Virus record (IMG/VR): IMGVR_UViG_3300037297_000066
Location: 248,001 to 312,000 of that record
DNA: 64,000 bases
Direction: 5' to 3' (one strand)
Shown here: positions 5,807 to 55,351 of the stretch, in pieces
Layout of the letters: every line of letters starts with the position of its first letter
Position numbering within the stretch: the stretch's first letter is position 1
Translations under genes and position numbers: made by a program
Notes under the pieces: generated by a model
The model's input: only the letters and a program-made list of their open reading frames with translations
Databases searched by the model: none
What the model was told of the DNA's origin: nothing

Positions 5807-6205
5807 ATGGTGGTAGCTGTGAAGGTCTTGATCTTCGGGTCACGAGAGTGGTTGAGCCCCGGGCCCATCCGGACGGTTCTTCAGCAGCTGCCCCCGGATT
5901 CGATCGTGGTGGCTGGAGCCTGTCGAGGGGCAGACAACATCGCCGCTCACGAGGCTCGCAAGCTCGGTCTTCGTGTCAGGGAGTACCCCGCTGACTGGGA
6001 CAGGTTCAATCTGGACGCTGGTCCCATGCGCAATCAGCAGATGCTCGACGAAGAGCATCCTGACCAAGAGGGAGTCCACATTGACCGTGCCTACTGTTTC
6101 CACCGCCAGACTGGTCTAGGCAAAGGCAGTCGGGATATGGCAGAACGTGTCCGGAAAGCTACCCCCACAATCCTTCTCAACATCACCTGCAAGGTAAGAG
6201 GATGA
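5807..6205 (+). CDS. SLOG / DUF2493-like (YspA-related) protein
   Basis: VLIFGSR, VVAGACRGAD, YPADW and AGPMRNQQML motifs. Confidence 0.8.
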   Translation: MVVAVKVLIFGSREWLSPGPIRTVLQQLPPDSIVVAGACRGADNIAAHEARKLGLRVREYPADWDRFNLDAGPMRNQQMLDEEHPDQEGVHIDRAYCFHRQTGLGKGSRDMAERVRKATPTILLNITCKVRG

Positions 6206-6828
6206 GCACCAAGATCTACAACGCCTACAGAGTCAAGAAGTCCCGAGACCTGTGGCCTCTTCTACGGGACATCCGACGCATAGCTGAAGCGAACGTTCGT
6301 CGGATGATCAACGAGTTCTACGACGATGTCCACAAGGGTATCAGCACCAAGAGTCCCCTCTACAAAGCGGCCCGGAAAAGAGGTTTGAATCCCTACGAAG
6401 CTAGAGAATCGGTGACTCGTAAGGTGGTGCATCGGGGGTACCGTATCCAAAGCACCACCATGGAACGGACGCTCTTCAACTTCGACGCTTCGGTCACGGT
6501 GAGAGAACACAAAGGTCGCTACTACCTCATCACCTATGCCGACTGGTTCTCCCCAGTGGGCAAGTGCTTCGAGTTCCTCCGAGAAGATCCTCGGCTAGAG
6601 GATTACCACTACCAGAACCAGTGCGATCGTCCCAAAGAGATCAGCGCCCGAGCGTGGAAGGCTCGGGAGAAGGTTTGGGACGCCATTGACGAGGCTGGGT
6701 GGTGGGACTACCTGAGTCTGACTATCTGTGACTGGGACAACTTTCGCCGGATAAATCCTTGGCTGGATCGAGTCAGGGAGTACTACCAAGAAAAAGCTCG
6801 CAAGAAAACCCGGAGCAAGAAGAAATGA
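6202..6828 (+). CDS. hypothetical protein
   Basis: 208-aa ORF, ATGA coupling. Confidence 0.7.
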   Translation: MSTKIYNAYRVKKSRDLWPLLRDIRRIAEANVRRMINEFYDDVHKGISTKSPLYKAARKRGLNPYEARESVTRKVVHRGYRIQSTTMERTLFNFDASVTVREHKGRYYLITYADWFSPVGKCFEFLREDPRLEDYHYQNQCDRPKEISARAWKAREKVWDAIDEAGWWDYLSLTICDWDNFRRINPWLDRVREYYQEKARKKTRSKKK

Positions 6829-7145
6829 ACAAGCTGCAACTAGCCCAATACATTGTTGACCAACTAAACGAGATCTACTCCCATGACCCCGAGGCCCTCC
6901 ATGCCTTGTGTGAGAGCCGGGTCCCCTGCAACGAAGCACTTAGGAAGCACCCGACGGTCCAGGTTCTTGTGGAAGGGGGTGGAACCGAGTCCAGGGTGGG
7001 ACTTCTTGGAATCCTCAACGGGATCGTCGGCATCCAGGACGACGGGTGGGGGTACATATCTGCCATATACGACGAAGATACCATGAGATTACAAGGGTTT
7101 AGCGTCCTGGACAAGACCCCAAAGGTTGACAATACCGAGCTCTAA
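6825..7145 (+). CDS. hypothetical protein
   Basis: ORF from MNKLQLAQ; VGLLGILNGIVG. Confidence 0.65.
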   Translation: MNKLQLAQYIVDQLNEIYSHDPEALHALCESRVPCNEALRKHPTVQVLVEGGGTESRVGLLGILNGIVGIQDDGWGYISAIYDEDTMRLQGFSVLDKTPKVDNTEL

Positions 7146-7217
7146 GTTTACGGCCCGCTGGCCGAAGGTTGACAATACTAGAGTTGGGTTTCCGGACCAG
7201 AGTTCAGGTGTTGACAA
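7122..7217 (+). repeat. AAGGTTGACAATAC direct repeat (x2) plus partial GTTGACAA
   Basis: copies at 7122-7135, 7165-7178 and 7210-7217. Confidence 0.6.
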
Positions 7218-7343
7218 CCTAAAGCCTCGTGTGCACACTATTCCCGAAATGCACGAATCGTAGCTGCACCGCCCCCGATCACGATCCCCTCCTGTTTGGT
7301 CGTTTGGCCCAAAACCCACAACGACTGAAACAGGAGAAGTATC

Positions 7344-7709
7344 ATGAAAGCATATTCGGAAGCGATCGGGAACCTCAGAACGAGAATCAAGGACCTTACC
7401 GAGAAGGCTCGGGAGAACAGAGCGGAGATCGCTCAACTCAAGGAACAGCCAGACACAGGGGTGGAACGCTGTTCTCTGAGGAGCGACTACTGCACGTACA
7501 CAAGGTCGGAGGCTAGGCACGTGTTGTTAGCCTACGCCCTGCTTCGAGGACGCCCTTACCTAGCCCTCGAACGCAAGTGCGTGGAGGAACCCTCCCCCAA
7601 TCGGATCCTGAAGAAGATTCAGGAAGCCTTCGGAGAGGACTACCCGGACTTCTCCCTTCAGACCATTCTCGATTGGCTGAAGGGAAAAGTCGAACAGCGG
7701 GCGGCGTAA
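7344..7709 (+). CDS. hypothetical protein
   Basis: 121-aa ORF with AGGAG RBS; EARHVLLAYALLRGRPY. Confidence 0.75.
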   Translation: MKAYSEAIGNLRTRIKDLTEKARENRAEIAQLKEQPDTGVERCSLRSDYCTYTRSEARHVLLAYALLRGRPYLALERKCVEEPSPNRILKKIQEAFGEDYPDFSLQTILDWLKGKVEQRAA

Positions 7710-8727
7710 CCTGGAACCTGAAGCAGGCAAAAAAGTGGCCGGAGGCTCTCATCAAGGGAGTCTCCGGGTTACCAGGGCGCCCCCGCTACTTGTGGTCTTG
7801 CACACACTACGACGGAGCTCTTTCTGGCGTCTGTCTCCATGAGGGTCGAGAACACTGGTTCGAGTGTGTTTATGACCAGCAGTGGATTGACAGTAGTGAA
7901 GGCGAACCAGAGTTTTTCCAAGGAAGAATCTTCGTACTGATTGAGCTGACAGCAGACGACATCAAACACGAGTACTCCCTTCAAAAACGGTTCAGCTTCT
8001 TCCTGGGAGGGCCCGTGGTCATGTACGAAGAGGATGGGTCTCGAAAGCGTGGCAGGCTAGTCAAGGATGGTAGGTTTGCCAGGCTGAAGAGGCGCATTCT
8101 GAACGGACCTTGGCGTTGGAAGCTCTACAACTGGTCTGTTCGGAACAAACCTAAGAGGGACTACTCCACTCGCAAGGTGGTTGGTTGGTGGGGGACCAAA
8201 GGCTTCAGCTTTGACATGTGCCTGGCTTATGGCCTGCACAAGAGAGGGCTGCTCTGATGAAGAACGTAGCTACTCTGACAGTGGAGGATGTCTACATGAT
8301 CTCCTACCTAGTCATGCGAGGATGGAAGCATCAAGGGTATCCAGACTGCTGGATCAAGGAAGGTTTCTACCATACCAAAACACAGCGGGCCGAGAGGTGT
8401 AACTGCGGCGGGTGTTGGGAAGATGTGGAGACCAATGAATTTGATTTGGAAGAGGCATACTATGTCCAAGAAGAAATTGACGCTAATCCAGACGGCGCTT
8501 CAGCCCCTCAAGCAACAGATTGAGGGTAAGGGTCTCCCTTGGGAGGAACCCTACGTCCTGGAAGAGGCTCCAGACTTTGCCGAGTGGGTCAAGGCCGATT
8601 GCCGGCTCGGGGCCGATGTGAGTTCTGGGAAGCTATGCATGTGGTTCATCACCAAGGATGACCTGAAATGGCAGCATCCCGACTTCGATCTAGAGCACCA
8701 CCTAGGGCTCTATGAGAGCTATGTCCG

Positions 8728-9051
8728 ATGGCCAGAAAACTTTACCTCGTGACCCGTAGCGACCTGCCCTTTGAGCAACAGGCCGTGCAGGCCGCTCACA
8801 GCCTCCACAGCTTCGAGAAGGAGCACCGGGAGGTCTATGTGACCTGGAGGGATGAAAGCCAAACCCTGGCCTTTCTGGCGGCTCCCAATGAGGGAGCTCT
8901 CCAGAGGCTCTTGGAGAAAGCTGAGTGGGCTGGGGTCCCTGCTGCTGGATTTCTGGAACCAGACTTGGGGAACTCCTTGACAGCAGTGGCTGTCGGGCCG
9001 GCCGGAAAGAAACTTTGCAGGCGTTTTCCATTGGCTATCTCTGGTGTATAG
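8728..9051 (+). CDS. peptidyl-tRNA hydrolase PTH2-like protein
   Basis: KLYLVTRSDL..QAVQAAH N-terminus and EPDLGNSLTAVAVGP C-terminus. Confidence 0.75.
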   Translation: MARKLYLVTRSDLPFEQQAVQAAHSLHSFEKEHREVYVTWRDESQTLAFLAAPNEGALQRLLEKAEWAGVPAAGFLEPDLGNSLTAVAVGPAGKKLCRRFPLAISGV

Positions 9052-9556: not shown

Positions 9557-9634
9557 GCTCTCGGACCCCGTGGAAGGGGCGACGGATTCTAACCCCGTGT
9601 CAGAGTGAGGGTTCAACTCCCTCCGAGAGCGCCA
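9557..9634 (+). tRNA. tRNA-Sup(CUA), amber anticodon
   Basis: GCTCTCG/CGAGAGC acceptor, loop TT-CTA-AC, GAGGG-TTCAACT-CCCTC, ends GCCA. Confidence 0.75.
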
Positions 9635-9635
9635 T

Positions 9636-9714
9636 GGGGACGTAGCTCAGTGGTTGAGAGCGGCGAGCTCTAAACTCGTGTCTGTCGGGGGTTCGAGTCC
9701 CTCCGTCCTCACCA
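9636..9714 (+). tRNA. tRNA-Sup(CUA), amber anticodon
   Basis: GGGGACG/CGTCCTC, D-arm GCTC-AGTGGTTGA-GAGC, GCGAG-CT-CTA-AA-CTCGT, ends ACCA. Confidence 0.85.
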
Positions 9715-30893: not shown

Positions 30894-30965
30894 GCCCCTG
30901 TAAGCATCTGGTGAGGCTACTAGCTTGTCACGCTAGCGAGGAGAGTTCGATTCTCTTCAGGGGCG
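30894..30965 (+). tRNA. tRNA-Asp(GTC)
   Basis: CTAGC-TT-GTC-AC-GCTAG. Confidence 0.85.
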
Positions 30966-30967
30966 CC

Positions 30968-31133
30968 GACTGACATCCCGCCGAGATGAGCCTACAAGCA
31001 ATCTGCTGGTTCGAATCCAGCCTCCGGCACCGGGGCTTAGCCCTATCCCTGCCGGAGTGGCCAAATTGGAAAAGGCAACAGTCTGAAGAAACTGTGTACA
31101 ACGCAATCCCGCTCTCACACTCGGATGTCAGTC
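30968..31133 (+). ncRNA. circularly permuted tRNA-like RNA with conserved terminal helix (Y-RNA-like), copy 1
   Basis: 11-bp terminal stem GACTGACATCC/GGATGTCAGTC; T-arm precedes acceptor hairpin, D-arm and anticodon-like arm. Confidence 0.8.
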
Positions 31134-31740: not shown

Positions 31741-31814
31741 GGGTCTAAGGCTGAGGTAGCCGGCTGGTTTCCAAGTCCAGTGACGATGGGGTTCGATTCC
31801 TCATAGACCCGCCA
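31741..31814 (+). tRNA. tRNA-Trp(CCA)
   Basis: loop TT-CCA-AG, G73, CCA. Confidence 0.7.
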
Positions 31815-31973
31815 GACGACATCCCGCCGGGATGAGCATACAAGCAAACGTTGGTTCGAATCCAACCTTCCCCACCAGGGCCTAGCCCAACCAATGGGGA
31901 AGTAGCCTAGTGGATAGGCAGCGGAAAGTAACTCCGTCGCAAGACTGAACCGCTCTCACACTCGGATGTCGTC
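31815..31973 (+). ncRNA. circularly permuted tRNA-like RNA (Y-RNA-like), copy 2
   Basis: 10-bp terminal stem GACGACATCC/GGATGTCGTC; acceptor CTTCCCC-ACCA...GGGGAAG. Confidence 0.8.
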
Positions 31974-32058: not shown

Positions 32059-32133
32059 GGGACCGTAGTACAAGGGTAAGTGCGCACGCCTGATAAGCGT
32101 GAAACGAAGGTTCAACTCCTTCCGGTCCTACCA
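32059..32133 (+). tRNA. tRNA-Ile(GAT)
   Basis: CT-GAT-AA, ACCA. Confidence 0.88.
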
Positions 32134-32297
32134 ATCGAGCGTCCCGCCGAGATGAGCATACAAGCAATATGTTGGTTCGAATCCAACCTCCCCCCCTAGG
32201 GCCTAGCCCAACCAAACGGGGGAGTAGCCTAACGGTAAGGCAGCGGACTCTTAATCCGTGCGAAAGCATACCCCGCTCCCTCACTCGGACGCTCGAT
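32134..32297 (+). ncRNA. circularly permuted tRNA-like RNA (Y-RNA-like), copy 3; Lys(CTT)-type anticodon arm
   Basis: 11-bp terminal stem ATCGAGCGTCC/GGACGCTCGAT; GCGGA-CT-CTT-AA-TCCGT. Confidence 0.8.
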
Positions 32298-33816: not shown

Positions 33817-34104
33817 ATGACCATGTCTGACCAAGAATCGAGAATTGCTCGCAATGTTGCTCTTCGTTACCTACGAGCTAGGAGGAAGAGCTCCTACCCG
33901 GAGTTCTTGAAATTCTTGGGAGAAGTCTTTTCGAAGCTTCACGGGAAGGACAGTTACTCGGCTAGCGAGCTTCGGACTCAGGCTCAGAAGCATCCTGACT
34001 TTGGTACGTATGAGAAGGACTACCAAGCCTATCTAGAGAAGGCTTGGCACGATCCTGCTTCGAAGTTGGTTCGAGACGGATACAAGTACGTCTGGAAGTC
34101 CTGA
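33817..34104 (+). CDS. hypothetical protein with NVALRY motif
   Basis: 95-aa ORF, AGGAG RBS. Confidence 0.7.
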   Translation: MTMSDQESRIARNVALRYLRARRKSSYPEFLKFLGEVFSKLHGKDSYSASELRTQAQKHPDFGTYEKDYQAYLEKAWHDPASKLVRDGYKYVWKS

Positions 34105-34150
34105 GGGGACAAGTTTTTGCTCGTCTTCGTGACGAGTGGGGGGTCGCTAC

Positions 34151-34223
34151 GCTTCGGTAGCTCAGTCGGTAGAGCAGTAGACTGAAAATCTATGTGTCGA
34201 TGGTTCAATTCCGTCCCGAAGCA
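34151..34223 (+). tRNA. tRNA-Phe(GAA)
   Basis: CT-GAA-AA. Confidence 0.9.
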
Positions 34224-34733
34224 CTACCGTAGTTTGGCCAGTTCCTTCTCTCGAACAGACTTCTCGTTGGGGTTTTGGTAGGCGACGGCATTGGCCACAT
34301 CGATGATCCCCACGTTGACAAGAGCAGCTGCTCCAATCGTCTGGTTCCCCTGGTTGACCTTCACGTGGCTATTGGACTCGTTTGCGGCTGAAAGGTGCTG
34401 AGCCTCGTTGGACTTCCAGTCCTTCAGGTAAAGATCCAACATCTGTAGAGCAGGTTTGGAGGCTCCTGTGAGAGGAAGATTGGATCGCAGGATACGTTCT
34501 GCGACCTTGGCCCCGGCCTGTCCGATCTTGAGAGCCTTGTCGTAGGCCCGGTCGAGCTTGACCCGGTCTCTGTCGTCGAACATGGCTCCTCGACTCTCCA
34601 CGTAAGTGAAGACTTTCGCTAGTTTGCCCAGGTCATCGTTTCTTTTTTGAGCGGGGGCTATGGCAGCTACGAGTTGACCTTGGGGGCCTCTCTTGGCGGC
34701 GTACCTTGCAGCGATTCGTTCTTCGAGGGTCAT
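34224..34733 (-). CDS. hypothetical protein with RIAARY motif
   Basis: 169-aa ORF antisense to the tRNA array. Confidence 0.7.
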   Translation of the reverse strand: MTLEERIAARYAAKRGPQGQLVAAIAPAQKRNDDLGKLAKVFTYVESRGAMFDDRDRVKLDRAYDKALKIGQAGAKVAERILRSNLPLTGASKPALQMLDLYLKDWKSNEAQHLSAANESNSHVKVNQGNQTIGAAALVNVGIIDVANAVAYQNPNEKSVREKELAKLR

Positions 34734-34784
34734 AATTCAGTTCCAGTAGAGGGCCTCAGTGGAGCTGGTTGACAAATTCTTTTT

Positions 34785-34860
34785 CAGGGCGTGGTGCAAT
34801 CTGGTAGCACGCCGGCTTTGGGTGCCGGTGGTTGGAGGTTCAAATCCTCTCGCCCTGACC
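34785..34860 (+). tRNA. tRNA-Pro(TGG)
   Basis: TT-TGG-GT. Confidence 0.9.
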
Positions 34861-35042
34861 CGGTGGCATGGAGCCTCTGACCGAAAGGTCACGATGATCG
34901 GGAGATCGTGAATGGCGCAGGATCACTGCCCTTTTTCTAGAGTAGGGTAAGCCCTGACAGTCGTTCCGTGGACGTCGGTTACTGGGTTCGAGTCCCAGCA
35001 CTGTTCCAATTTCTACGCCAGTCATTCCGGCTGGTGTATTTA

Positions 35043-35091
35043 CCCCAGCAGACACACTTGGACGGTATGCCGTCCCGCCGTGTCGGGAGAG
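35043..35091 (+). promoter_or_regulatory. copy of the conserved RNA helix overlapping the RBS of the TROVE-like gene (putative autoregulatory operator)
   Basis: GACAC-ACTT-GGACGG-TATG-CCGTCC-CGCC-GTGTC directly before GGGAGAG-ATG. Confidence 0.6.
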
Positions 35092-37011
35092 ATGAAAATG
35101 GTAGACCAGGTACAGCGTGAGAACCTGGGTCCGGCAGAGCGTATCATCAACGTCCTGTTGACCTACGAGGACCACATGGTCCACAACCGGGTTGGGATCG
35201 TAGAGCCCGATCCAGACAGCCAGATCGGCCTTCGCTGGACCCAGGCAACTTGGGTCGAGAAGGACGGCAAGAAGGTTGTCTACAAGCTCCTCCCTGGGGC
35301 CCGGGGACGAAACGGAAAGACCACTCGGCGCAAGGTCGAAGTGGGCACTCTCTGGAACGACGGCACGGTTCGCAGTGCCGATCGTCGGAAGATCGGGGAG
35401 CTCCGTCAGCCTGGCCTCTTTCCCGAAGTGGCAGTCTGGATGTACCGACAGGTGGCTGAGATCTACAAGCTCGACAACGAGTTCTGTGCTCGTTGGGCCA
35501 GCTACGCTTACTCCCAGACCCACCGAGATCTGAAGGTGGTACTGGCGGCCTTCCTCCTGGTTCAGGCTCGCAAGGGTGACCCTGTGATGGACCAGGGCAA
35601 GGTAGCCTTCTTCGACGACGACTTCCGTGACGTGGGTGAGGCAATGTGCCTTCACTACGGTGGGAAGTCCGACAAGTCTGCTCTCGATGCGAAGCTTCTG
35701 CTCCGCATTCGGAAGATTCTGGAGGTCCCTGAGATCGCCCAGATCAACCGAGATCTTGGGTTCGGGAAGTCGGCTCGGAGGGCTTACCTGGGTCGTTGGC
35801 CCAGGGTCGTTCAGAAGTGGCTGAGATACCGGGAAGACAACCCGGTTCTGCTGCGGGGCTTGGTCAACAAGGGTGCTTTCCGAGCAACCGTACAGGACTT
35901 GGCTCAGCAGTCTCGGTACAGTCCGTCGAGCCCCCTCTTCTACCAGATCCTTCGGTGGCCTCAGAAGCAGGCTGACGGGGGACACCGGAAGATGGCTCTC
36001 GACCAGAAGGTGACCAAGCAGGAATCCTGGGCGGGTAAGACCGAACAGGAGATCTGCGAGATCATCACCAGTCAGAGGACTGGTTGGAAGCGTGTCACGA
36101 CTCTGGTTCCGTCAGAGATTGGGGTTACCCGAGCCATCATGGCAGCAGCTGTGGAGGCAGGGTCCCTCTCGGACAAGGACCTGATCAACCACACGCCACT
36201 TTTGGAAGAACTGGGCCTCTTGCAGGACCAGGACGTTCGGGGGCGTTGGGAGGCTGCGCTTCAGGCTGCCGAGGACCGTCGAGCTGCTAACGTGGCTCGT
36301 AACGTCAAGAGCCAGCAGACTCGTGAGCAACTCGAAGGGGCTGCTGACCAGTCTGTCCTGAAGGCTGTCGAAGAGGTGGCTACAGGGATTCGGGTCTTCT
36401 TCTGTGTGGACCGATCTTCCTCGATGGGTATCGCTATCGAGGCAGCCAAGGAGCACATCGAGAAGTTCTTGCCTGGGTTCCCGCCCGATCAGCTCTTCAT
36501 CTGTGCCTTCAACTCGTCTGCTCGGAAGGTGACTCTCAAGCAGCACTCGTCGGTTGGAGTTCGGGAAGCTTTCCGGGGCATGGTCGGCTCTGGAGGCACG
36601 GACTACGGTGCGGCTGTACGCTTCTTCTCGAAGCCCGAGTACATGCCAGCCGAGGAGGAGGTTTCGCTCTTCTTCTTCATCGGAGACGAAGCAGCGGACA
36701 CTCGTTCCTTGGTTCAGGCCGTTCGGAACTCGGATCTCAACATCGTGGCCTTCGCTCTGGTGAAGGTCGTGTCTCCCGGTTGGGACCCTGGACTCTGTGT
36801 TCAGGAAGCTGCAGCCCAGTTGGGTATCCCTGTGATCCCGATCGACGAGAAGGTGTTCTCGGACGTCTATGCGACCCCGAGGATCCTTCGTGACCTGATC
36901 GCAAATACGCCGGTAGCTCAGACCCCTGGTCACAGGGAGGTTCGGCGGGTGACCCTTCTGGACACCATTCTGGACACTGAGCTGCTCAAGAAGCCCCTGT
37001 GGGCTGCATGA
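35092..37011 (+). CDS. TROVE/Ro60-like RNA-binding protein with C-terminal vWA domain
   Basis: helical N-terminal region with TROVE-like pattern (LDAKLLLRI..YLGRWPRVVQKWL..FRATVQDLAQQSRYSP); MIDAS FCVDRSSSMG, GGTDYG and FIGDE. vWA is secure; TROVE is inferred. Confidence 0.7.
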   Translation: MKMVDQVQRENLGPAERIINVLLTYEDHMVHNRVGIVEPDPDSQIGLRWTQATWVEKDGKKVVYKLLPGARGRNGKTTRRKVEVGTLWNDGTVRSADRRKIGELRQPGLFPEVAVWMYRQVAEIYKLDNEFCARWASYAYSQTHRDLKVVLAAFLLVQARKGDPVMDQGKVAFFDDDFRDVGEAMCLHYGGKSDKSALDAKLLLRIRKILEVPEIAQINRDLGFGKSARRAYLGRWPRVVQKWLRYREDNPVLLRGLVNKGAFRATVQDLAQQSRYSPSSPLFYQILRWPQKQADGGHRKMALDQKVTKQESWAGKTEQEICEIITSQRTGWKRVTTLVPSEIGVTRAIMAAAVEAGSLSDKDLINHTPLLEELGLLQDQDVRGRWEAALQAAEDRRAANVARNVKSQQTREQLEGAADQSVLKAVEEVATGIRVFFCVDRSSSMGIAIEAAKEHIEKFLPGFPPDQLFICAFNSSARKVTLKQHSSVGVREAFRGMVGSGGTDYGAAVRFFSKPEYMPAEEEVSLFFFIGDEAADTRSLVQAVRNSDLNIVAFALVKVVSPGWDPGLCVQEAAAQLGIPVIPIDEKVFSDVYATPRILRDLIANTPVAQTPGHREVRRVTLLDTILDTELLKKPLWAA

Positions 37012-37019
37012 GGTGAAAC

Positions 37020-37958
37020 ATGGGTTGGAGAGATCTGCTTCAGACCGAGGATGAGACGTTCGTCTCCCCCTGGGTGGGAGGAAGGTCTCTCCGATCCTTC
37101 GATCGCTTCTGGCGTATCGAGGGAAAACTCCCTCAAGAGCATGGTTGGCATAGGTTCCGTCTGGCGGGCCGGAAGGCTTGTTGGACGGGGCCTGCTGATC
37201 AGTCTGGGGAGCTCAGGGATCGTCTGAGAGGCTACCTGGTAGCTGACCGACTCGTGCCAGATGAGGCTCGGGTCGAGACAGATCCAATCAAGCTGGCTCA
37301 GGGATTCGAGAGAGTTCACCTGATCGAGCCTGGTTTGGATCGGTTCGTTCGGGTAGTCGCTGGCCGGTCCTTCGAGGACGGCCCTCTCATCTACGACAGC
37401 CAGGAGTTCCCTCTTGGTCCCGAGGATGAGGTTCTTCAGGCATACTTCGACGAAGCCAAGTCTGTGGACCATGTCTCGGGGGTCGCCCCTGCTTTGGAGG
37501 CTGCGTTTCGTTTCGAATCGTGGCATCGGGAGGAGATCCGGCGGCGTCGAGAAGAGGAACGAAAGCGTCGGGAGGAAGAGGATCGGCAGCGTCAGTTGGA
37601 GGCTCGGAGACAGGAAATCATCGAGACTTTGGGGGATGCTGCTGGACGTCGGGAACTGGCTCGTTACGACTTTGCTGAGGCAGCCAGAGCTGCTTTGGCG
37701 GTAGGAGGAGCTCAGTACCTAGACTCTCGTCCCTCCTACAACAAGGGCGAGATGGTTGTTCGGTACCGGATGAACGGCCGGGGGTTGGAGTGCACTTGTG
37801 ACGCTCAGACCCTGAGGATCATCGATTCCGGCTGCTGTCTGACCAACCACGCCACTGGGGAGCAGACCGACACGAGGTTCACCCTGGAGTCACTTCCGGG
37901 GGTCATACAAGAAGCTGACCGTCGGCACATCTTGGTGGTGTATCGTCACGTAGACTGA
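37020..37958 (+). CDS. conserved hypothetical protein; C-terminal E2-like (UBC-fold) candidate
   Basis: coiled coil followed by IIDSGCCLT..FTLESLPGVIQEA, resembling the E2 GxICL..TLxxL pattern; operon context. Confidence 0.45.
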   Translation: MGWRDLLQTEDETFVSPWVGGRSLRSFDRFWRIEGKLPQEHGWHRFRLAGRKACWTGPADQSGELRDRLRGYLVADRLVPDEARVETDPIKLAQGFERVHLIEPGLDRFVRVVAGRSFEDGPLIYDSQEFPLGPEDEVLQAYFDEAKSVDHVSGVAPALEAAFRFESWHREEIRRRREEERKRREEEDRQRQLEARRQEIIETLGDAAGRRELARYDFAEAARAALAVGGAQYLDSRPSYNKGEMVVRYRMNGRGLECTCDAQTLRIIDSGCCLTNHATGEQTDTRFTLESLPGVIQEADRRHILVVYRHVD

Positions 37959-37966
37959 GAGGTACC

Positions 37967-38338
37967 ATGCAGGAATCAGGCGTTGTTTTGGATCTGAAGG
38001 AGCAGCCGATCTATTGGCACACCCCAGCGGATCGGACAACGGGGGCTATTCCTGACAGCCACACTCTGTGGGAGGTCCTCTGGGAGAATCGTGAAAACCT
38101 GTCTGGGTTTGCCCACAGTCATCCTGGCCGTGGGCTTCCCGGGCCATCCTACACGGATGTCACGACATTCTCCTCCATTGAGCGAGCTCTCGGAAAGAAG
38201 CTCAATTGGTGGATCACCAGCGAGGATCGGGTCGCCTTGGTCAGGTGGTTTGGTCCTGGGAAACACGACTACAAGGCACTTGCCGTAGAAGATGAACTGG
38301 TCTGGGTACCCAGACTGAGAGAACTTTCCTACCCTTAG
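37967..38338 (+). CDS. JAB/MPN metallo-isopeptidase
   Basis: N-terminal E and GFAHSHP..GPSYTDV (HxH-x7-S-x2-D). Confidence 0.85.
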   Translation: MQESGVVLDLKEQPIYWHTPADRTTGAIPDSHTLWEVLWENRENLSGFAHSHPGRGLPGPSYTDVTTFSSIERALGKKLNWWITSEDRVALVRWFGPGKHDYKALAVEDELVWVPRLRELSYP

Positions 38339-38366
38339 GGGTAGACACGAAGGAAGGTCAAATCAG

Positions 38367-38627
38367 ATGGCAATCGAAGAGCATGAAGCACGTGTGAACA
38401 TCACCTGGGCTCAGCAGAACGGCGATCTGCCGGACCCAGTGGCATTCGACGCAACGGATGCCAACATCCTGACCTGGGCCACCGAAGCCGTCCGTGGTGG
38501 AGATGTCCCTGGAATCGAAGCTGACCAGAACGCCGACTTCGACGGGTACGTTGTGGAGCGATTCGCCTCCAAGGAGGAAGTCCCCTACAACCGGCTCGTG
38601 GTTCGGCCGAAGGCAGAGTTTGGTTGA
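38367..38627 (+). CDS. ubiquitin-like (beta-grasp) protein candidate
   Basis: 86 aa, strand-strand-helix-strand pattern, ends LVVRPKAEFG; lies between JAB and ThiF. Confidence 0.65.
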   Translation: MAIEEHEARVNITWAQQNGDLPDPVAFDATDANILTWATEAVRGGDVPGIEADQNADFDGYVVERFASKEEVPYNRLVVRPKAEFG

Positions 38628-38669
38628 TAACCAGGTGGGTGGCCTTCGGGCCATCCGCTGTCACCCAAG

Positions 38670-39257
38670 ATGGAGATGAAGATGCAGACAGTGATGGTAG
38701 TGGGTGTGGGGGCCCTCGGATCCCACGCCATCCAATTCCTCCGAGGAGCAGCCCGGATTCGTGCCATCGACTTCGATCGGGTGGAGCAGAAGAATACCCT
38801 TTCTCAGTTTCACCCCAGGAATTCGGTGGGCAAGAACAAGGCCCAAGCCCTCCAGCAGGCGATGCAGTTCCTCTGGGGGATCAAGATCGAGGTCATTCCT
38901 CACAAGCTCGTTCAGGGCAACGCTCAGGTCGTTCTCAAGGGAGCGGACCTGGTTCTAGACTGCCTGGACAACGGGGCTTCCCGTGAGATCCTGCAGAAGG
39001 CTGTTCGGCAGGCCGGTATTCCGTGTCTTCATGGAGCTCTCTCTGCCGGGGGCATGTTCGGCCGGGTCATCTGGGACGATCTGTTCAATATCGACTACGA
39101 GTCTGGAGAAGGGATTGCCACTTGCGAGGATGGGGCTTTCCTGCCGTTCATCGGTCTGGTGAGCACCTACCTGGCTCGGAGCGCCCAAGCCTGGCTAGAA
39201 ACTGGGAAGCAGCTTAGCTTCCAGGTCTACCCTTCGGCCCCCGCCACCAGGATTTAG
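38670..39257 (+). CDS. ThiF/E1-like adenylyltransferase
   Basis: VVGVGALGS, IDFDRVEQKN, KNKAQAL and DLVLDCLDN motifs. Confidence 0.92.
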   Translation: MEMKMQTVMVVGVGALGSHAIQFLRGAARIRAIDFDRVEQKNTLSQFHPRNSVGKNKAQALQQAMQFLWGIKIEVIPHKLVQGNAQVVLKGADLVLDCLDNGASREILQKAVRQAGIPCLHGALSAGGMFGRVIWDDLFNIDYESGEGIATCEDGAFLPFIGLVSTYLARSAQAWLETGKQLSFQVYPSAPATRI

Positions 39258-39261
39258 GGGG

Positions 39262-39289
39262 TTGAAAACAAGCTCCAACGGTGTATAGT
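39262..39289 (+). promoter_or_regulatory. promoter-like TTGAAA-N16-TATAGT upstream of the tRNA-like RNA trio
   Basis: contains the GGTGTATAGT motif seen at 4 intergenic sites. Confidence 0.55.
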
Positions 39290-39361
39290 GCATCCGTTGG
39301 TTTCTGGAGAACATCGTGAGAAAGCTGGAATGAGACTTTGCCGGGTTTCGGCCCGGCTTCT

Positions 39362-39504
39362 GGGGCTTCACAGGGGATGTGGTTCCCCGCCTGTTTTTTG
39401 GAACAGGAGCATCAGCTCTACCCCGCCACCACACTCGGTTTCCTAGGAAACCCGCCGTAGTTGGCCTACAAGCATTACCGGTTCGACTCCGGGAAGCCCC
39501 GCCA
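39362..39504 (+). ncRNA. CCA-ended tRNA-like RNA with the conserved helix inserted in the variable region
   Basis: GGGGCTT/AAGCCCC-G-CCA; T-arm CCGG-TTCGACT-CCGG; ACTCGG-TTTCC-TA-GGAAA-CCCGCC. Confidence 0.75.
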
Positions 39505-39513
39505 CTCAAAAAC

Positions 39514-39649
39514 GCCGCTCTTGAGGCACGGTCGCCTCACTTTCCCTACAAGAAAGCTAAGCTAGCCCCGCATGTACACTCGGCCCTCTCGGGGGCCCGC
39601 CGTATGGTGCATACAAGCAATTCCGGTTCGACTCCGGAGAGCGGCGCCA
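39514..39649 (+). ncRNA. second CCA-ended tRNA-like RNA with the inserted conserved helix
   Basis: GCCGCTC/GAGCGGC-G-CCA; D-arm TGAGGC/GCCTCA; ACTCGG-CCC..GGG-CCCGCC. Confidence 0.75.
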
Positions 39650-39777
39650 GGACATCCCGCAGGAACGTGCCTACACGCATACAGCTCAATTGGTAGAGCA
39701 TCGGATTCCTATTCCGAGGGTTGGGGGTTCAAATCCCCCTATGTGACCTTCCTACCGCACCTCCACTCGGATGTCCT
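39649..39777 (+). ncRNA. conserved helix enclosing a tRNA-Arg(CCT) body (39676-39746)
   Basis: AGGACATCC/GGATGTCCT stem; inner TCGGA-TT-CCT-AT-TCCGA, no CCA. Confidence 0.7.
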
Positions 39778-39877
39778 AATCTCTTAATCCCAAGCCCCCA
39801 GGAGAAGATCTCCTGCGTGTGGCTAAGGGACACCTTCTAGGGGTTCATGATCAATCTACTTGTTGGGACTGTTGATC

Positions 39878-54877: not shown

Positions 54878-55260
54878 GGGGCCGATTTGGTTTCGACAGA
54901 GGCATGGAGGTTGTAGTTGCGAGCAGAGGCGCTCGGCCCTTTCCAAAACCGAGCCGTAAATAGCTGCAAACGATAATGCAATCGCTGATCAGGCCATCGC
55001 AGCCTGAAAGCCGTCCGACCTTGAGATAGCCTTGGTAAAGGAAGGACGTCAGCACTAAGGCCACTGGACCACAAGGATTGCCTAACCACTTGTGATCGAC
55101 ATTGCAGAATGGCTTTGACGGGCGAGATTCCCGGAACCTCAGAAAGGCAGCCAGCGGCCTCCTGAGTTTTGAACATCCCCTTGGGGACTAGTTGGCTACG
55201 CTCGTGAATGAGGCTACAAGCAAAGGTTTCTGGAACCGGGTTCGAGTCCCGGCGGCTCCA
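54878..55260 (+). ncRNA. ssrA: tmRNA; tag peptide ANDNAIADQAIAA
   Basis: GGGGCCG..TTTCGAC 5' end, G3:U70 acceptor CGGCTCC-A, T-arm CCGGG-TTCGAGT-CCCGG; tag ORF 54966-55007. Confidence 0.92.
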
Positions 55261-55351
55261 CTAAGCAATTTCAAGTCCTGTCAAGGTGTCTGAGCGTCTC
55301 TGATGCTCACTTGTAGGAGTGCTATGAAAAAGCTGAAACGATAGGTGTACC

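What the first reader, a model, noticed from the sequence alone, without database searches (positions are those of the whole stretch)
35043..35094. The RNA helix also covers the start of the TROVE-like gene: probable translational autoregulation
Seen: GACAC-ACTT-GGACGG-TATG-CCGTCC-CGCC-GTGTC ends right at GGGAGAG-ATG, with a GGTGTA promoter-like motif at 35033. It keeps the ACU(U/C)/CGCC internal loop and the GG/CC pairs. Known: many RNA-binding proteins repress their own mRNA through a mimic of their target. Inference: this is independent evidence that the 35092 protein is the ligand of the helix, and free protein would shut down the whole Ubl operon until titrated by the RNAs.
Basis: partly seen in the sequence, partly recalled or inferred. 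Interest (0 to 1): 0.78.

Follow-up and report, generated by a model that had tools for sequence, protein, structure and literature searches.

The report
Small-RNA look-alike helix before Ro60-like gene
Just upstream of a giant phage's Ro60-like RNA-binding gene lies an RNA hairpin that copies the core of the phage's own tRNA-like small RNAs, so it may let a protein of this operon (most plausibly the Ro60-like one) throttle its own synthesis; this is untested.

Summary
The hairpin is real: 35051-35084, with 5 + 6 base pairs around a 4x4 internal loop (ACUU/CGCC). It ends 7 nt before ATG 35092, next to the ribosome-binding site GGGAG.

It has the same geometry and 15-nt core as the helices of two tRNA-like small RNAs just after the operon (39424-39465, 39569-39610). 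That core occurs only three times in the 437-kb phage genome. The stems around it differ by compensatory changes.

The 639-aa gene product has no Pfam TROVE hit. Its predicted fold and its language-model neighbours are Ro60/TROVE plus vWA.

The five-gene operon (Ro60-like, unknown 312 aa, JAB, 86-aa putative Ubl, E1) is conserved in 36 related huge-phage loci. A CUC-loop helix of the small-RNA type sits 8-16 nt before the start codon in 5 of the other 33 non-redundant leaders, and farther upstream in a sixth. That is well above chance (6 vs 0.49 expected), but most leaders lack it.

Binding and repression are untested. The binding protein is inferred only by analogy. The helix does not cover the start codon. 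A covariance model of the small-RNA helices scores the leader no better than background.

The parts
35051..35084 (+). Two-tier leader helix. Outer stem 35051-55/35080-84; 4x4 internal loop ACUU (35056-59) / CGCC (35076-79); apical stem 35060-65/35070-75; tetraloop UAUG 35066-69.
   Evidence: Sequence. MFE fold -20.2 kcal/mol, z -2.58. Gapless 34-nt match to the two small-RNA helices. Covariation on alignment A9.
35044..35046 (+). CCC predicted to pair with GGG 35085-35087. This extends the helix into the Shine-Dalgarno sequence.
   Evidence: RNAfold MFE and centroid structures. Prediction only.
35085..35089 (+). Shine-Dalgarno-like GGGAG immediately 3' of the helix.
   Evidence: Sequence. An analogous GGAG/GGGAG follows the helix directly in L036 and L018, and 3 nt later in L008.
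35092..37011 (+). Gene for a 639-aa divergent Ro60-like protein: TROVE-like helical solenoid with an inserted beta subdomain, plus a C-terminal vWA domain. An alternative start at ATG 35098 has better spacing from the SD.
   Evidence: Pfam finds only VWA_2. Foldseek top 9 PDB hits are Ro60/Rsr/TROVE. For the N-terminal domain alone, the VIA-align top 7 are all Ro60/TROVE, Z 6.6-8.8. 58 of the 100 nearest ESM-Atlas clusters are TROVE.
35033..35038 (+). GGTGTA motif, a possible phage promoter element. It forms the 3' strand of a separate hairpin, 35014-35038.
   Evidence: Present in 10 of 34 homologous leaders vs 1.15 expected. GGTGTAYAGT occurs 32 times in the genome. No sigma-70 consensus site here. 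Promoter function is inferred.
34956..35008 (+). tRNA-like element upstream of the leader: T arm 34982-34998, a 6-bp acceptor-like stem, and an encoded CCA at 35006-35008. It may be a processing signal that defines the mRNA 5' end.
   Evidence: Sequence. Weak mascRNA-like hit, 17.8 bits, E 7.4. Not called by ARAGORN.
39424..39500 (+). Small RNA unit A: helix 39424-39465 with ACUC/CGCC loop, then YUACAAGC (ACAAGC 39468-73), T arm 39478-39492 and a tail.
   Evidence: R1 47.3 bits.
39569..39645 (+). Small RNA unit B: helix 39569-39610 with ACUC/CGCC loop, ACAAGC 39613-18, T arm 39623-39637.
   Evidence: R1 49.4 bits.
37020..39257 (+). Rest of the operon: unknown 312-aa protein (37020-37958), JAB-like (37967-38338), 86-aa putative Ubl ending in Gly (38367-38627), E1/ThiF-like (38670-39257).
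   Evidence: Pfam ThiF 1.7e-23; Prok-JAB 4.6e-4, below the curated cut-off. Gene order is conserved in the first six related loci. The 312-aa and 86-aa proteins have no family hit.

Best explanation
The helix is a selected cis-acting RNA element in the 5' leader of the operon mRNA. It is a paralogue of the protein-binding helix module of the phage's own tRNA-like small RNAs, but it lacks their ACAAGC/T-arm module. It most likely works as a translational operator.

Proposed mechanism: a protein that recognises the internal-loop core (5' N-CUY-G / 3' loop) binds the helix. By analogy with Ro60 and Y RNA, this would be the Ro60-like product of the first gene. Binding holds the helix closed against the adjacent ribosome-binding site and blocks the 30S subunit. 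The abundant small RNAs carry the invariant CUC version and compete for the same protein, so translation would follow the ratio of free protein to small RNA.

Shown:
- the structure;
- its identity of core and geometry with the small-RNA helices;
- compensatory stem changes;
- its position next to the SD;
- recurrence of the same motif at the same position in a minority of distant homologous operons;
- the Ro60-like fold of the protein.

Inferred:
- that the helix is transcribed as part of the mRNA;
- that a protein binds it, and which one;
- that binding represses translation.
For: - The structure exists and is stable.
- The core ACACUYGG...CCCGCCGU is found only at 35054, 39431 and 39576 in 437 kb, against 0.005 expected per strand.
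- In the gapless alignment of the leader with five small-RNA helices, 90.9% of cells pair, 10 of 11 pairs show changes on both sides, 0 of 500 shuffles reach this, and slid registers give 33-48% pairing.
- The small-RNA family has a conserved two-tier helix with invariant CUC across 29 units from 15 phages.
- Leaders of homologous operons: 6 of 34 carry the CUC helix against 0.49 expected (P about 1e-5). In five of these (L008, L013, L031, L032, L036) it ends 8-16 nt before the start codon, as does the window's CUU variant.
- The energy-based variant gives 7 of 34 against 1.24 expected.
- Among descriptor hits that are followed within 20 nt by a plausible gene start, 6 are the Ro60-like gene and about 7 belong to all other genes of the 34 loci.
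- In L032 the leader's 5' loop (ACCUC) and its flanks match one of that phage's own small RNAs, while loops differ between phages.
- The protein is Ro60-like by fold.
- Ro60 proteins are known to bind a helix of adjacent Y/YrlA RNAs, mainly through conserved bases of one strand (PMC4201824).
Against: - About 70-80% of homologous leaders have no such helix, including Rctr197k and the L005/L017/L022 group. Any such control is therefore dispensable.
- The window's copy has CUU at a position that is CUC in every small RNA.
- Covariance model R1 gives the leader 13.4 bits (E 0.11 in 14 kb), the same as background hits.
- The small RNAs and the leader lack the known Ro60-binding motifs GNCGAA(N)G and GGUCCGA and match no Rfam Y RNA family.
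- No transcript data exist, so the 5' end of the mRNA is unknown. In L008 and L004 the GGTGTA motif lies inside the helix.
- The start codon itself is not in the helix.
- Another operon protein, for example the unannotated 312-aa one, could be the ligand.
Confidence: 0.4

Rival explanations
1. The helix is a functional leader element with a different job or ligand. It could be a 5' stem-loop that stabilises the mRNA, or one that marks where the mRNA is cut from a tRNA/tRNA-like co-transcript. It could be recognised by the same processing or modifying factor that handles the small RNAs, or by another operon protein (the 312-aa one) or a host factor, rather than by the Ro60-like protein acting as a repressor.
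For: - The operon lies inside a dense tRNA array, and a tRNA-like element with encoded CCA (34956-35008) ends 43 nt before the helix.
- The helix would sit at or near the 5' end of the mRNA if GGTGTA is a promoter element.
- The known Ro60-binding motifs are absent.
- The 312-aa protein is uncharacterised.
Against: - The leader lacks the T arm/ACAAGC part that tRNA-processing enzymes would need.
- The motif sits before the Ro60-like gene specifically, not before other genes.
- It has a fixed position next to the SD.
Confidence: 0.27
2. The helix is a non-functional remnant. It could be a partial duplication or gene-conversion copy of a small-RNA unit, or a recombination scar flanking the operon cassette, that happens to lie before the gene.
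For: - Copies of the same core flank the operon on both sides.
- In L032 the 5' half of the leader is near-identical to a small RNA of the same phage, as expected after duplication or conversion.
- The window's copy carries CUU at an otherwise invariant position.
- Most homologues do without it.
Against: - The stems have diverged completely yet stay paired through compensatory changes, while the loop core is kept.
- The motif recurs at the same distance from the start codon in phages whose proteins are only about 50% identical.
Confidence: 0.17
3. The helix belongs to a third, separately processed small RNA, made of the upstream tRNA-like element, hairpin 35014-35038 and the helix. It would then not be part of the mRNA leader.
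For: A T-arm element lies 50 nt upstream. Small RNAs of this family combine the helix with a T arm.
Against: - The order is reversed: T arm first here, helix first in all 29 units. The ACAAGC linker is missing.
- No terminator follows the helix.
- Only 7 nt separate it from the start codon, so the SD would have to be shared.
Confidence: 0.1
4. The helix is a chance hairpin in a GC-rich intergenic region.
For: The folding z-score is only -2.58. R1 scores the helix like background.
Against: The 15-nt core is shared with two other sites, against 0.005 expected per strand. The geometry is identical and the pairs are compensated. The motif recurs in homologous leaders.
Confidence: 0.02

Closest known systems
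Translational operators that mimic the regulator's RNA target, e.g. the E. coli thrS leader mimicking the tRNA-Thr anticodon arm, ribosomal-protein operon leaders, and the MS2 coat and T4 RegA operators (from general knowledge, not tested here)
   Same: A stem-loop next to the Shine-Dalgarno sequence of the regulator's own (first) gene copies the helix of an abundant RNA partner. The copy deviates at one conserved base, as lower-affinity operators often do.
   Different: No binding or repression has been shown. The presumed regulator is a Ro60-like protein, for which no such control was found in three literature searches. The element is present in only a minority of homologous operons.
Ro60/Rsr with Y RNAs and YrlA tRNA-like Y RNAs (Chen et al. 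2014, PMC4201824)
   Same: - A Ro60-like (TROVE-like + vWA) protein is encoded next to same-strand small RNAs.
- Those RNAs combine a protein-binding-type helix with a tRNA-like T arm.
- A YUAY element precedes the region before the T arm.
- The system occurs in phages.
   Different: - There is no GNCGAA(N)G or GGUCCGA motif and no Rfam hit.
- The helix is a closed hairpin, not a 5'/3'-end duplex.
- No D arm or acceptor-like stem-loop was recognised.
- The protein is not detected by Pfam TROVE.
- The partner genes are JAB/Ubl/E1, not RtcB/RtcA.
rsr-yrlBA-rtcBA operon of Salmonella (PMC7790460)
   Same: Ro60, its small RNAs and effector enzymes are encoded as one unit.
   Different: That operon is controlled transcriptionally by RtcR/sigma-54. 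Here the candidate control is a leader helix acting on translation.
TROVE proteins noted in a subset of jumbo phages (Iyer et al. 2021, PMC7824862)
   Same: A TROVE-type RNA-binding protein with a tRNA-like partner in large phage genomes.
   Different: That survey places them with RNA-repair ligases. It does not mention Ubl/JAB genes (zero occurrences of these terms) or a leader mimic.

Membership tests
Autoregulatory translational operator (target mimicry) | Lies in the 5' leader and overlaps or abuts the ribosome-binding site of the regulator's gene | tested here: met
   The helix ends at 35084, GGGAG is at 35085-35089, and the ATGs are at 35092/35098. The predicted CCC/GGG pairing takes in half of the SD. 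That the helix is transcribed is assumed.
Autoregulatory translational operator (target mimicry) | Resembles the regulator's primary RNA ligand | tested here: met
   The geometry is the same and the ACACUYGG/CCCGCCGU core is shared with the two adjacent small RNAs. Caveats: CUU replaces the invariant CUC, and R1 gives only 13.4 bits. That these small RNAs are the ligand is itself an inference.
Autoregulatory translational operator (target mimicry) | Conserved in the leaders of homologous genes | tested here: inconclusive
   Present in 6-7 of 34 non-redundant leaders against 0.5-1.2 expected, and in about 10-12 by eye. Absent from the majority.
Autoregulatory translational operator (target mimicry) | The gene product binds the element and represses translation | not testable with these tools
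   Needs gel-shift, toeprint and reporter assays. No RNA run was listed.
Y RNA / YrlA | Ro60-binding motif GNCGAA(N)G (bacterial) or GGUCCGA (metazoan) | tested here: not met
   Neither motif occurs in 34862-35091 or 39258-39680.
Y RNA / YrlA | Match to curated covariance models | tested here: not met
   No Rfam family other than tRNA matched at gathering score. No Y-RNA-type family matched at E <= 10 in 34000-39800.
Y RNA / YrlA | Encoded within 4 kb of a Ro60 gene on the same strand, with a tRNA-like T stem-loop | tested here: met
   This holds for the two small RNAs. The leader helix itself has no T arm.
Ro60 / TROVE protein family (for the 35092 gene) | Sequence match to Pfam TROVE (PF05731) | tested here: not met
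   None of the 31 family members hit TROVE even at E <= 1. All hit vWA models. A PDB sequence-profile search found only vWA chains.
Ro60 / TROVE protein family (for the 35092 gene) | Helical-repeat TROVE fold followed by a vWA domain | tested here: met
   - Full-length model: the top 9 Foldseek hits are Ro60/Rsr/TROVE over 540-580 columns, E 1e-7 to 4e-6.
- N-terminal 430 aa alone: the top 7 VIA-align hits are all Ro60/TROVE, Z 6.6-8.8, against at most 5.8 for others, and Foldseek probability for 2nvo is 0.99.
- 58 of 100 Atlas neighbours are TROVE clusters.
- TM-scores are low (0.2-0.3) and rmsd is high, so this is a distant relative.
Intrinsic terminator | GC-rich hairpin followed by a U tract | tested here: not met
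   No terminator-like site in 34200-35200. GGGAGAGAUG follows the helix.

The most novel reading that the evidence does not exclude
A distinct clade of Ro60-like proteins in huge phages measures its own free concentration through a leader copy of its Y-RNA-like partners. This would couple the load on the phage's tRNA-like small RNAs to the synthesis of the Ro60-like protein, and perhaps of the phage-encoded ubiquitin-like conjugation module (JAB/Ubl/E1) behind it. It would be the first autoregulatory Y-RNA mimic, and the first Ro60-Ubl functional link.
Probability: 0.3. Interest if true: 0.75.

Novelty: new variant of a known kind. Interest (0 to 1): 0.6.

Why it matters
Ro60 and its Y RNAs are conserved from bacteria to humans, but how Ro60 levels are matched to Y RNA levels is not known. 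A leader copy of the Y-like helix would give a simple, testable titration mechanism. It would also point to the helix, rather than the T arm, as the protein-binding module of a new family of phage small RNAs. The operon further links a Ro60-like protein to a ubiquitin-like conjugation set in 200-540 kb phages. I found no report of this association. A defined RNA-protein pair would give an experimental handle on that system.

Tried and rejected
- **Rfam.** A gathering-score scan of the whole window and an E-value scan of 34000-39800 gave only tRNAs and the tmRNA, plus chance-level hits.
- **Covariance model R1.** Built from six same-geometry small-RNA helices, it was too narrow. It found few other units and scored the leader at 13.4 bits, like background.
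- **Broader seed alignment.** A 20-helix alignment (A8) put the two loop-length classes out of register in the outer stem. No second model was built, and explicit descriptors with measured background were used instead.
- **First loose descriptor.** It gave 417 hits in the genome and was discarded.
- **Collection scans.** The few genuine units came from contigs or loci that also carry operon genes. This is not a real test of association.
- **Transcript evidence.** No RNA run was listed.
- **Strain variation.** A strain 1.2% diverged (run X3) shows no listed change between 34964 and 35213. About one change would be expected in the leader, so this says nothing.
- **The 312-aa protein.** Pfam and the Atlas gave no lead.
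- **Sigma-70 promoter and terminator scan.** Nothing found.
- **Rejected readings.** Terminator: no U tract. Chance hairpin: the core is shared three times. Member of the YrlA family: the motifs are absent.
Full report
**Context**

The window is bases 248001-312000 of a 437-kb IMG/VR phage genome with direct terminal repeats. Wetland and sediment metagenomes hold it. It carries 52 tRNA genes and a tmRNA.

The finding lies between tRNA-Pro (34784-34861) and a five-gene, same-strand operon:
- 35092-37011: 639 aa
- 37020-37958: 312 aa, no family hit
- 37967-38338: weak Prok-JAB hit
- 38367-38627: 86 aa, no family hit, ends in Gly
- 38670-39257: ThiF/E1, 1.7e-23

**The observation**

- The outer stem is 35051-55/35080-84.
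- The internal loop is ACUU/CGCC.
- The apical stem is 35060-65/35070-75, closed by tetraloop UAUG.

It is the minimum-free-energy fold of the 61-nt stretch: -20.2 kcal/mol, z -2.58, with 3 of 200 shuffles as good. CCC 35044-46 additionally pairs with GGG 35085-87.

GGGAG (35085-89) follows directly, then ATG 35092 and ATG 35098. The helix therefore abuts and partly overlaps the ribosome-binding site. It does not cover the start codon. By SD spacing, 35098 is the likelier start.

**What it resembles**

Directly after the operon lie two small-RNA units (39424-39500 and 39569-39645). Each has a two-tier helix with an ACUC/CGCC loop, then YUACAAGC and a tRNA-type T arm.

The leader helix and these two helices align without gaps over 34 nt.
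- ACACU(Y)GG and CCCGCCGU are identical in all three.
- Apical-stem pairs 3-6 and the distal outer pairs are all different but compensated.
- The composite core occurs three times in the 437-kb genome, at these three places, against 0.005 expected per strand.

I also aligned the leader, the two window helices and three same-geometry helices from other phages, six sequences in all.
- 90.9% of cells pair.
- 10 of 11 pairs change on both sides.
- No shuffle out of 500 reaches this.
- Slid registers give 33-48% pairing.

So the leader helix is a genuine structural paralogue of the small-RNA helix.

**The small-RNA family**

I found 43 non-tRNA units with the ACAAG...T-arm signature in related phage loci. 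In the 29 aligned ones, CUC at the 3' end of the 5' loop is invariant. Nearly every unit folds on its own into the same shape:
- an outer stem;
- a 5' loop of 4-5 nt;
- an apical stem of 6-7 bp;
- a 3' loop of 4-7 nt.

The window's genome has only five ACAAGC units. The two CUC-helix ones lie next to the operon. Three short-hairpin ones lie at about 30994, 31840 and 32160, and their loops also contain CCCGCCG.

These RNAs are not YrlA by the published criteria. They have no GNCGAA(N)G or GGUCCGA motif (PMC4201824) and no Rfam match. They do share the YUAY element and the T arm.

**The protein**

Pfam sees only the vWA domain in all 31 family members, and no TROVE hit even at E <= 1. A PDB sequence-profile search finds only vWA chains.

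Fold-level and language-model evidence points to Ro60:
- The AlphaFold model has pLDDT 84. Its nine best Foldseek PDB matches are Ro60, Rsr, a TROVE domain and a Thermus-phage Ro60, each aligned over 540-580 columns.
- The N-terminal 430 residues folded alone have pLDDT 86. They give only weak Foldseek E-values, but probability 0.99 for D. radiodurans Rsr.
- The seven best VIA-align matches to that domain are all Ro60/TROVE (Z 6.6-8.8), above other helical repeats (at most 5.8).
- 58 of the 100 nearest ESM-Atlas clusters are TROVE families.

I accept "TROVE-like" as a distant, fold-level relationship. The protein has an inserted beta subdomain at about residues 35-105.

**Conservation of the operon and its leader**

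The operon is conserved in 36 loci from 200-540 kb phages, including Virus Rctr197k. Protein identity to the window is 44-56%. I fixed the start codons by alignment and examined 34 non-redundant leaders.

A strict descriptor was used, requiring:
- an outer stem of at least 4 bp;
- CUC directly before an apical stem of at least 5 bp;
- a 3' loop of 3-7 nt.

This descriptor recovers 14 of 27 true small-RNA helices. It hits 6 leaders against 0.49 expected from the rate in the same loci (P about 1e-5). The window adds a CUU variant. An energy-based version gives 7 of 34 against 1.24 expected (P 3e-4).

In L008, L013, L031, L032, L036 and the window, the helix ends 8-16 nt before the start codon. 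An SD-like GGAG/GGGAG/AAGGA usually follows directly. L013 and L031 are close relatives and count once.

By eye, L012, L018 and L027 also fit. L004, L024 and L033 have the motif farther upstream.

The motif is specific to this gene. Among descriptor hits followed within 20 nt by a plausible gene start, six are the Ro60-like gene. About seven belong to all the other genes of the 34 loci.

In L032 the leader's 5' loop and flanks match one of that phage's own small RNAs. Loop sequences differ between phages.

Against this, most leaders have nothing of the kind. These include Rctr197k, L003/L014, L005/L017/L022, L006, L007, L011, L015, L019, L020, L023 and L028-L030.

**The upstream motif**

GGTGTA (35033-38) is not part of a sigma-70 consensus promoter. 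It does recur within 130 nt upstream of the gene in 10 of 34 loci, against 1.15 expected. GGTGTAYAGT occurs 32 times in this genome, including at 39280 ahead of the small RNAs. A phage-specific promoter element is a reasonable guess. It would put the transcript start a few bases before the helix. In L004 and L008, however, the motif lies inside the helix, so this remains open.

**Mechanism**

The best-supported reading is a translational operator. A protein recognises the internal-loop core and clamps the helix next to the SD. The small RNAs compete for that protein.

The Ro60-like protein is the most plausible ligand for three reasons:
- Ro60 proteins bind a helix of neighbouring Y RNAs, mainly through conserved bases of one strand (PMC4201824).
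- The motif sits before this gene specifically.
- The leader keeps only the helix module, not the T arm.

All of this is inference. No binding, repression or transcript data exist.

Points against:
- the CUU deviation;
- the R1 score (13.4 bits, like background);
- the absence of known Ro60-binding motifs;
- the patchy conservation.

The genes do not overlap.

**Rivals**
- A leader element for mRNA stability or processing, or one bound by another protein (0.27).
- A duplication or conversion remnant (0.17).
- Part of a third small RNA together with the upstream tRNA-like element 34956-35008 (0.10).
- Chance (0.02).

**Novelty**

Translational control by target mimicry is a known kind of mechanism. 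TROVE proteins with tRNA-like partners have been noted in some jumbo phages (PMC7824862). Three literature searches found no autoregulatory Y-RNA-like leader and no Ro60-like/JAB/Ubl/E1 operon. I rate the finding a new variant of a known kind, with interest 0.6.

Noticed in passing
window 34956-35008: A tRNA-like element that ARAGORN does not call. It has a T arm (34982-34998), a 6-bp acceptor-like stem and an encoded CCA (35006-35008). The only Rfam signal is a weak mascRNA-like hit (17.8 bits). L008 has a similar element, with a 7-bp acceptor stem ending in ACCA, just before its leader helix. It may serve as an RNase P/Z processing signal for the operon mRNA.
   Followed up: partly
window 35033-35038, 39280-39289 and 296, 2675, 9043, 29744, 42762, 47776: The GGTGTA(Y)AGT-type motif recurs in intergenic positions. 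GGTGTA lies upstream of the Ro60-like gene in 10 of 34 related loci (1.15 expected), and GGTGTAYAGT occurs 32 times in the genome. It is possibly a promoter element specific to this phage group.
   Followed up: partly
window about 30950-31040, 31795-31885, 32115-32205: Three further ACAAGC + T-arm units sit inside the tRNA array. They have a short hairpin instead of the CUC helix. The 7-nt loop of that hairpin holds CCGCC, preceded by a stem C, so that CCCGCCG reads through as in the 3' side of the CUC helices and the leader.
   Followed up: partly
window 9557-9634 and 9636-9714: Two adjacent tRNAs with anticodon CUA, which ARAGORN labels tRNA-Pyl. These are amber-suppressor-type tRNAs and may indicate UAG reassignment or late-gene recoding in this phage.
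   Followed up: no
window 54878-55263: A phage-encoded tmRNA (116 bits) with tag peptide ANDNAIADQAIAA.
   Followed up: no
L001 (KX853510.1, Virus Rctr197k) 5977-7926 and 7929-8867: The public record annotates the Ro60-like gene only as a misc_feature. It also places a minus-strand CDS (8397-8849) where the plus strand encodes a clear homologue of the 312-aa protein (54% identity). This is probably an annotation error.
   Followed up: partly
L001, L005, L007 (between the 312-aa gene and JAB): In L001 and L005, about 3 kb of extra genes sit between the 312-aa gene and the JAB/Ubl genes. In L007 the extra DNA lies instead between the Ro60-like gene and the 312-aa gene (about 1.3 kb). The operon therefore tolerates insertions.
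   Followed up: no
window 34860 / 39683 (run X3): One contig in a marine-sediment run joins the end of tRNA-Pro (34860) to the start of tRNA-Arg (39683), skipping the leader, the operon and the small RNAs (4822 nt). The matching side is only 25 nt at 80% likeness, so it may come from another organism's tRNAs rather than from a cassette-less relative.
   Followed up: no
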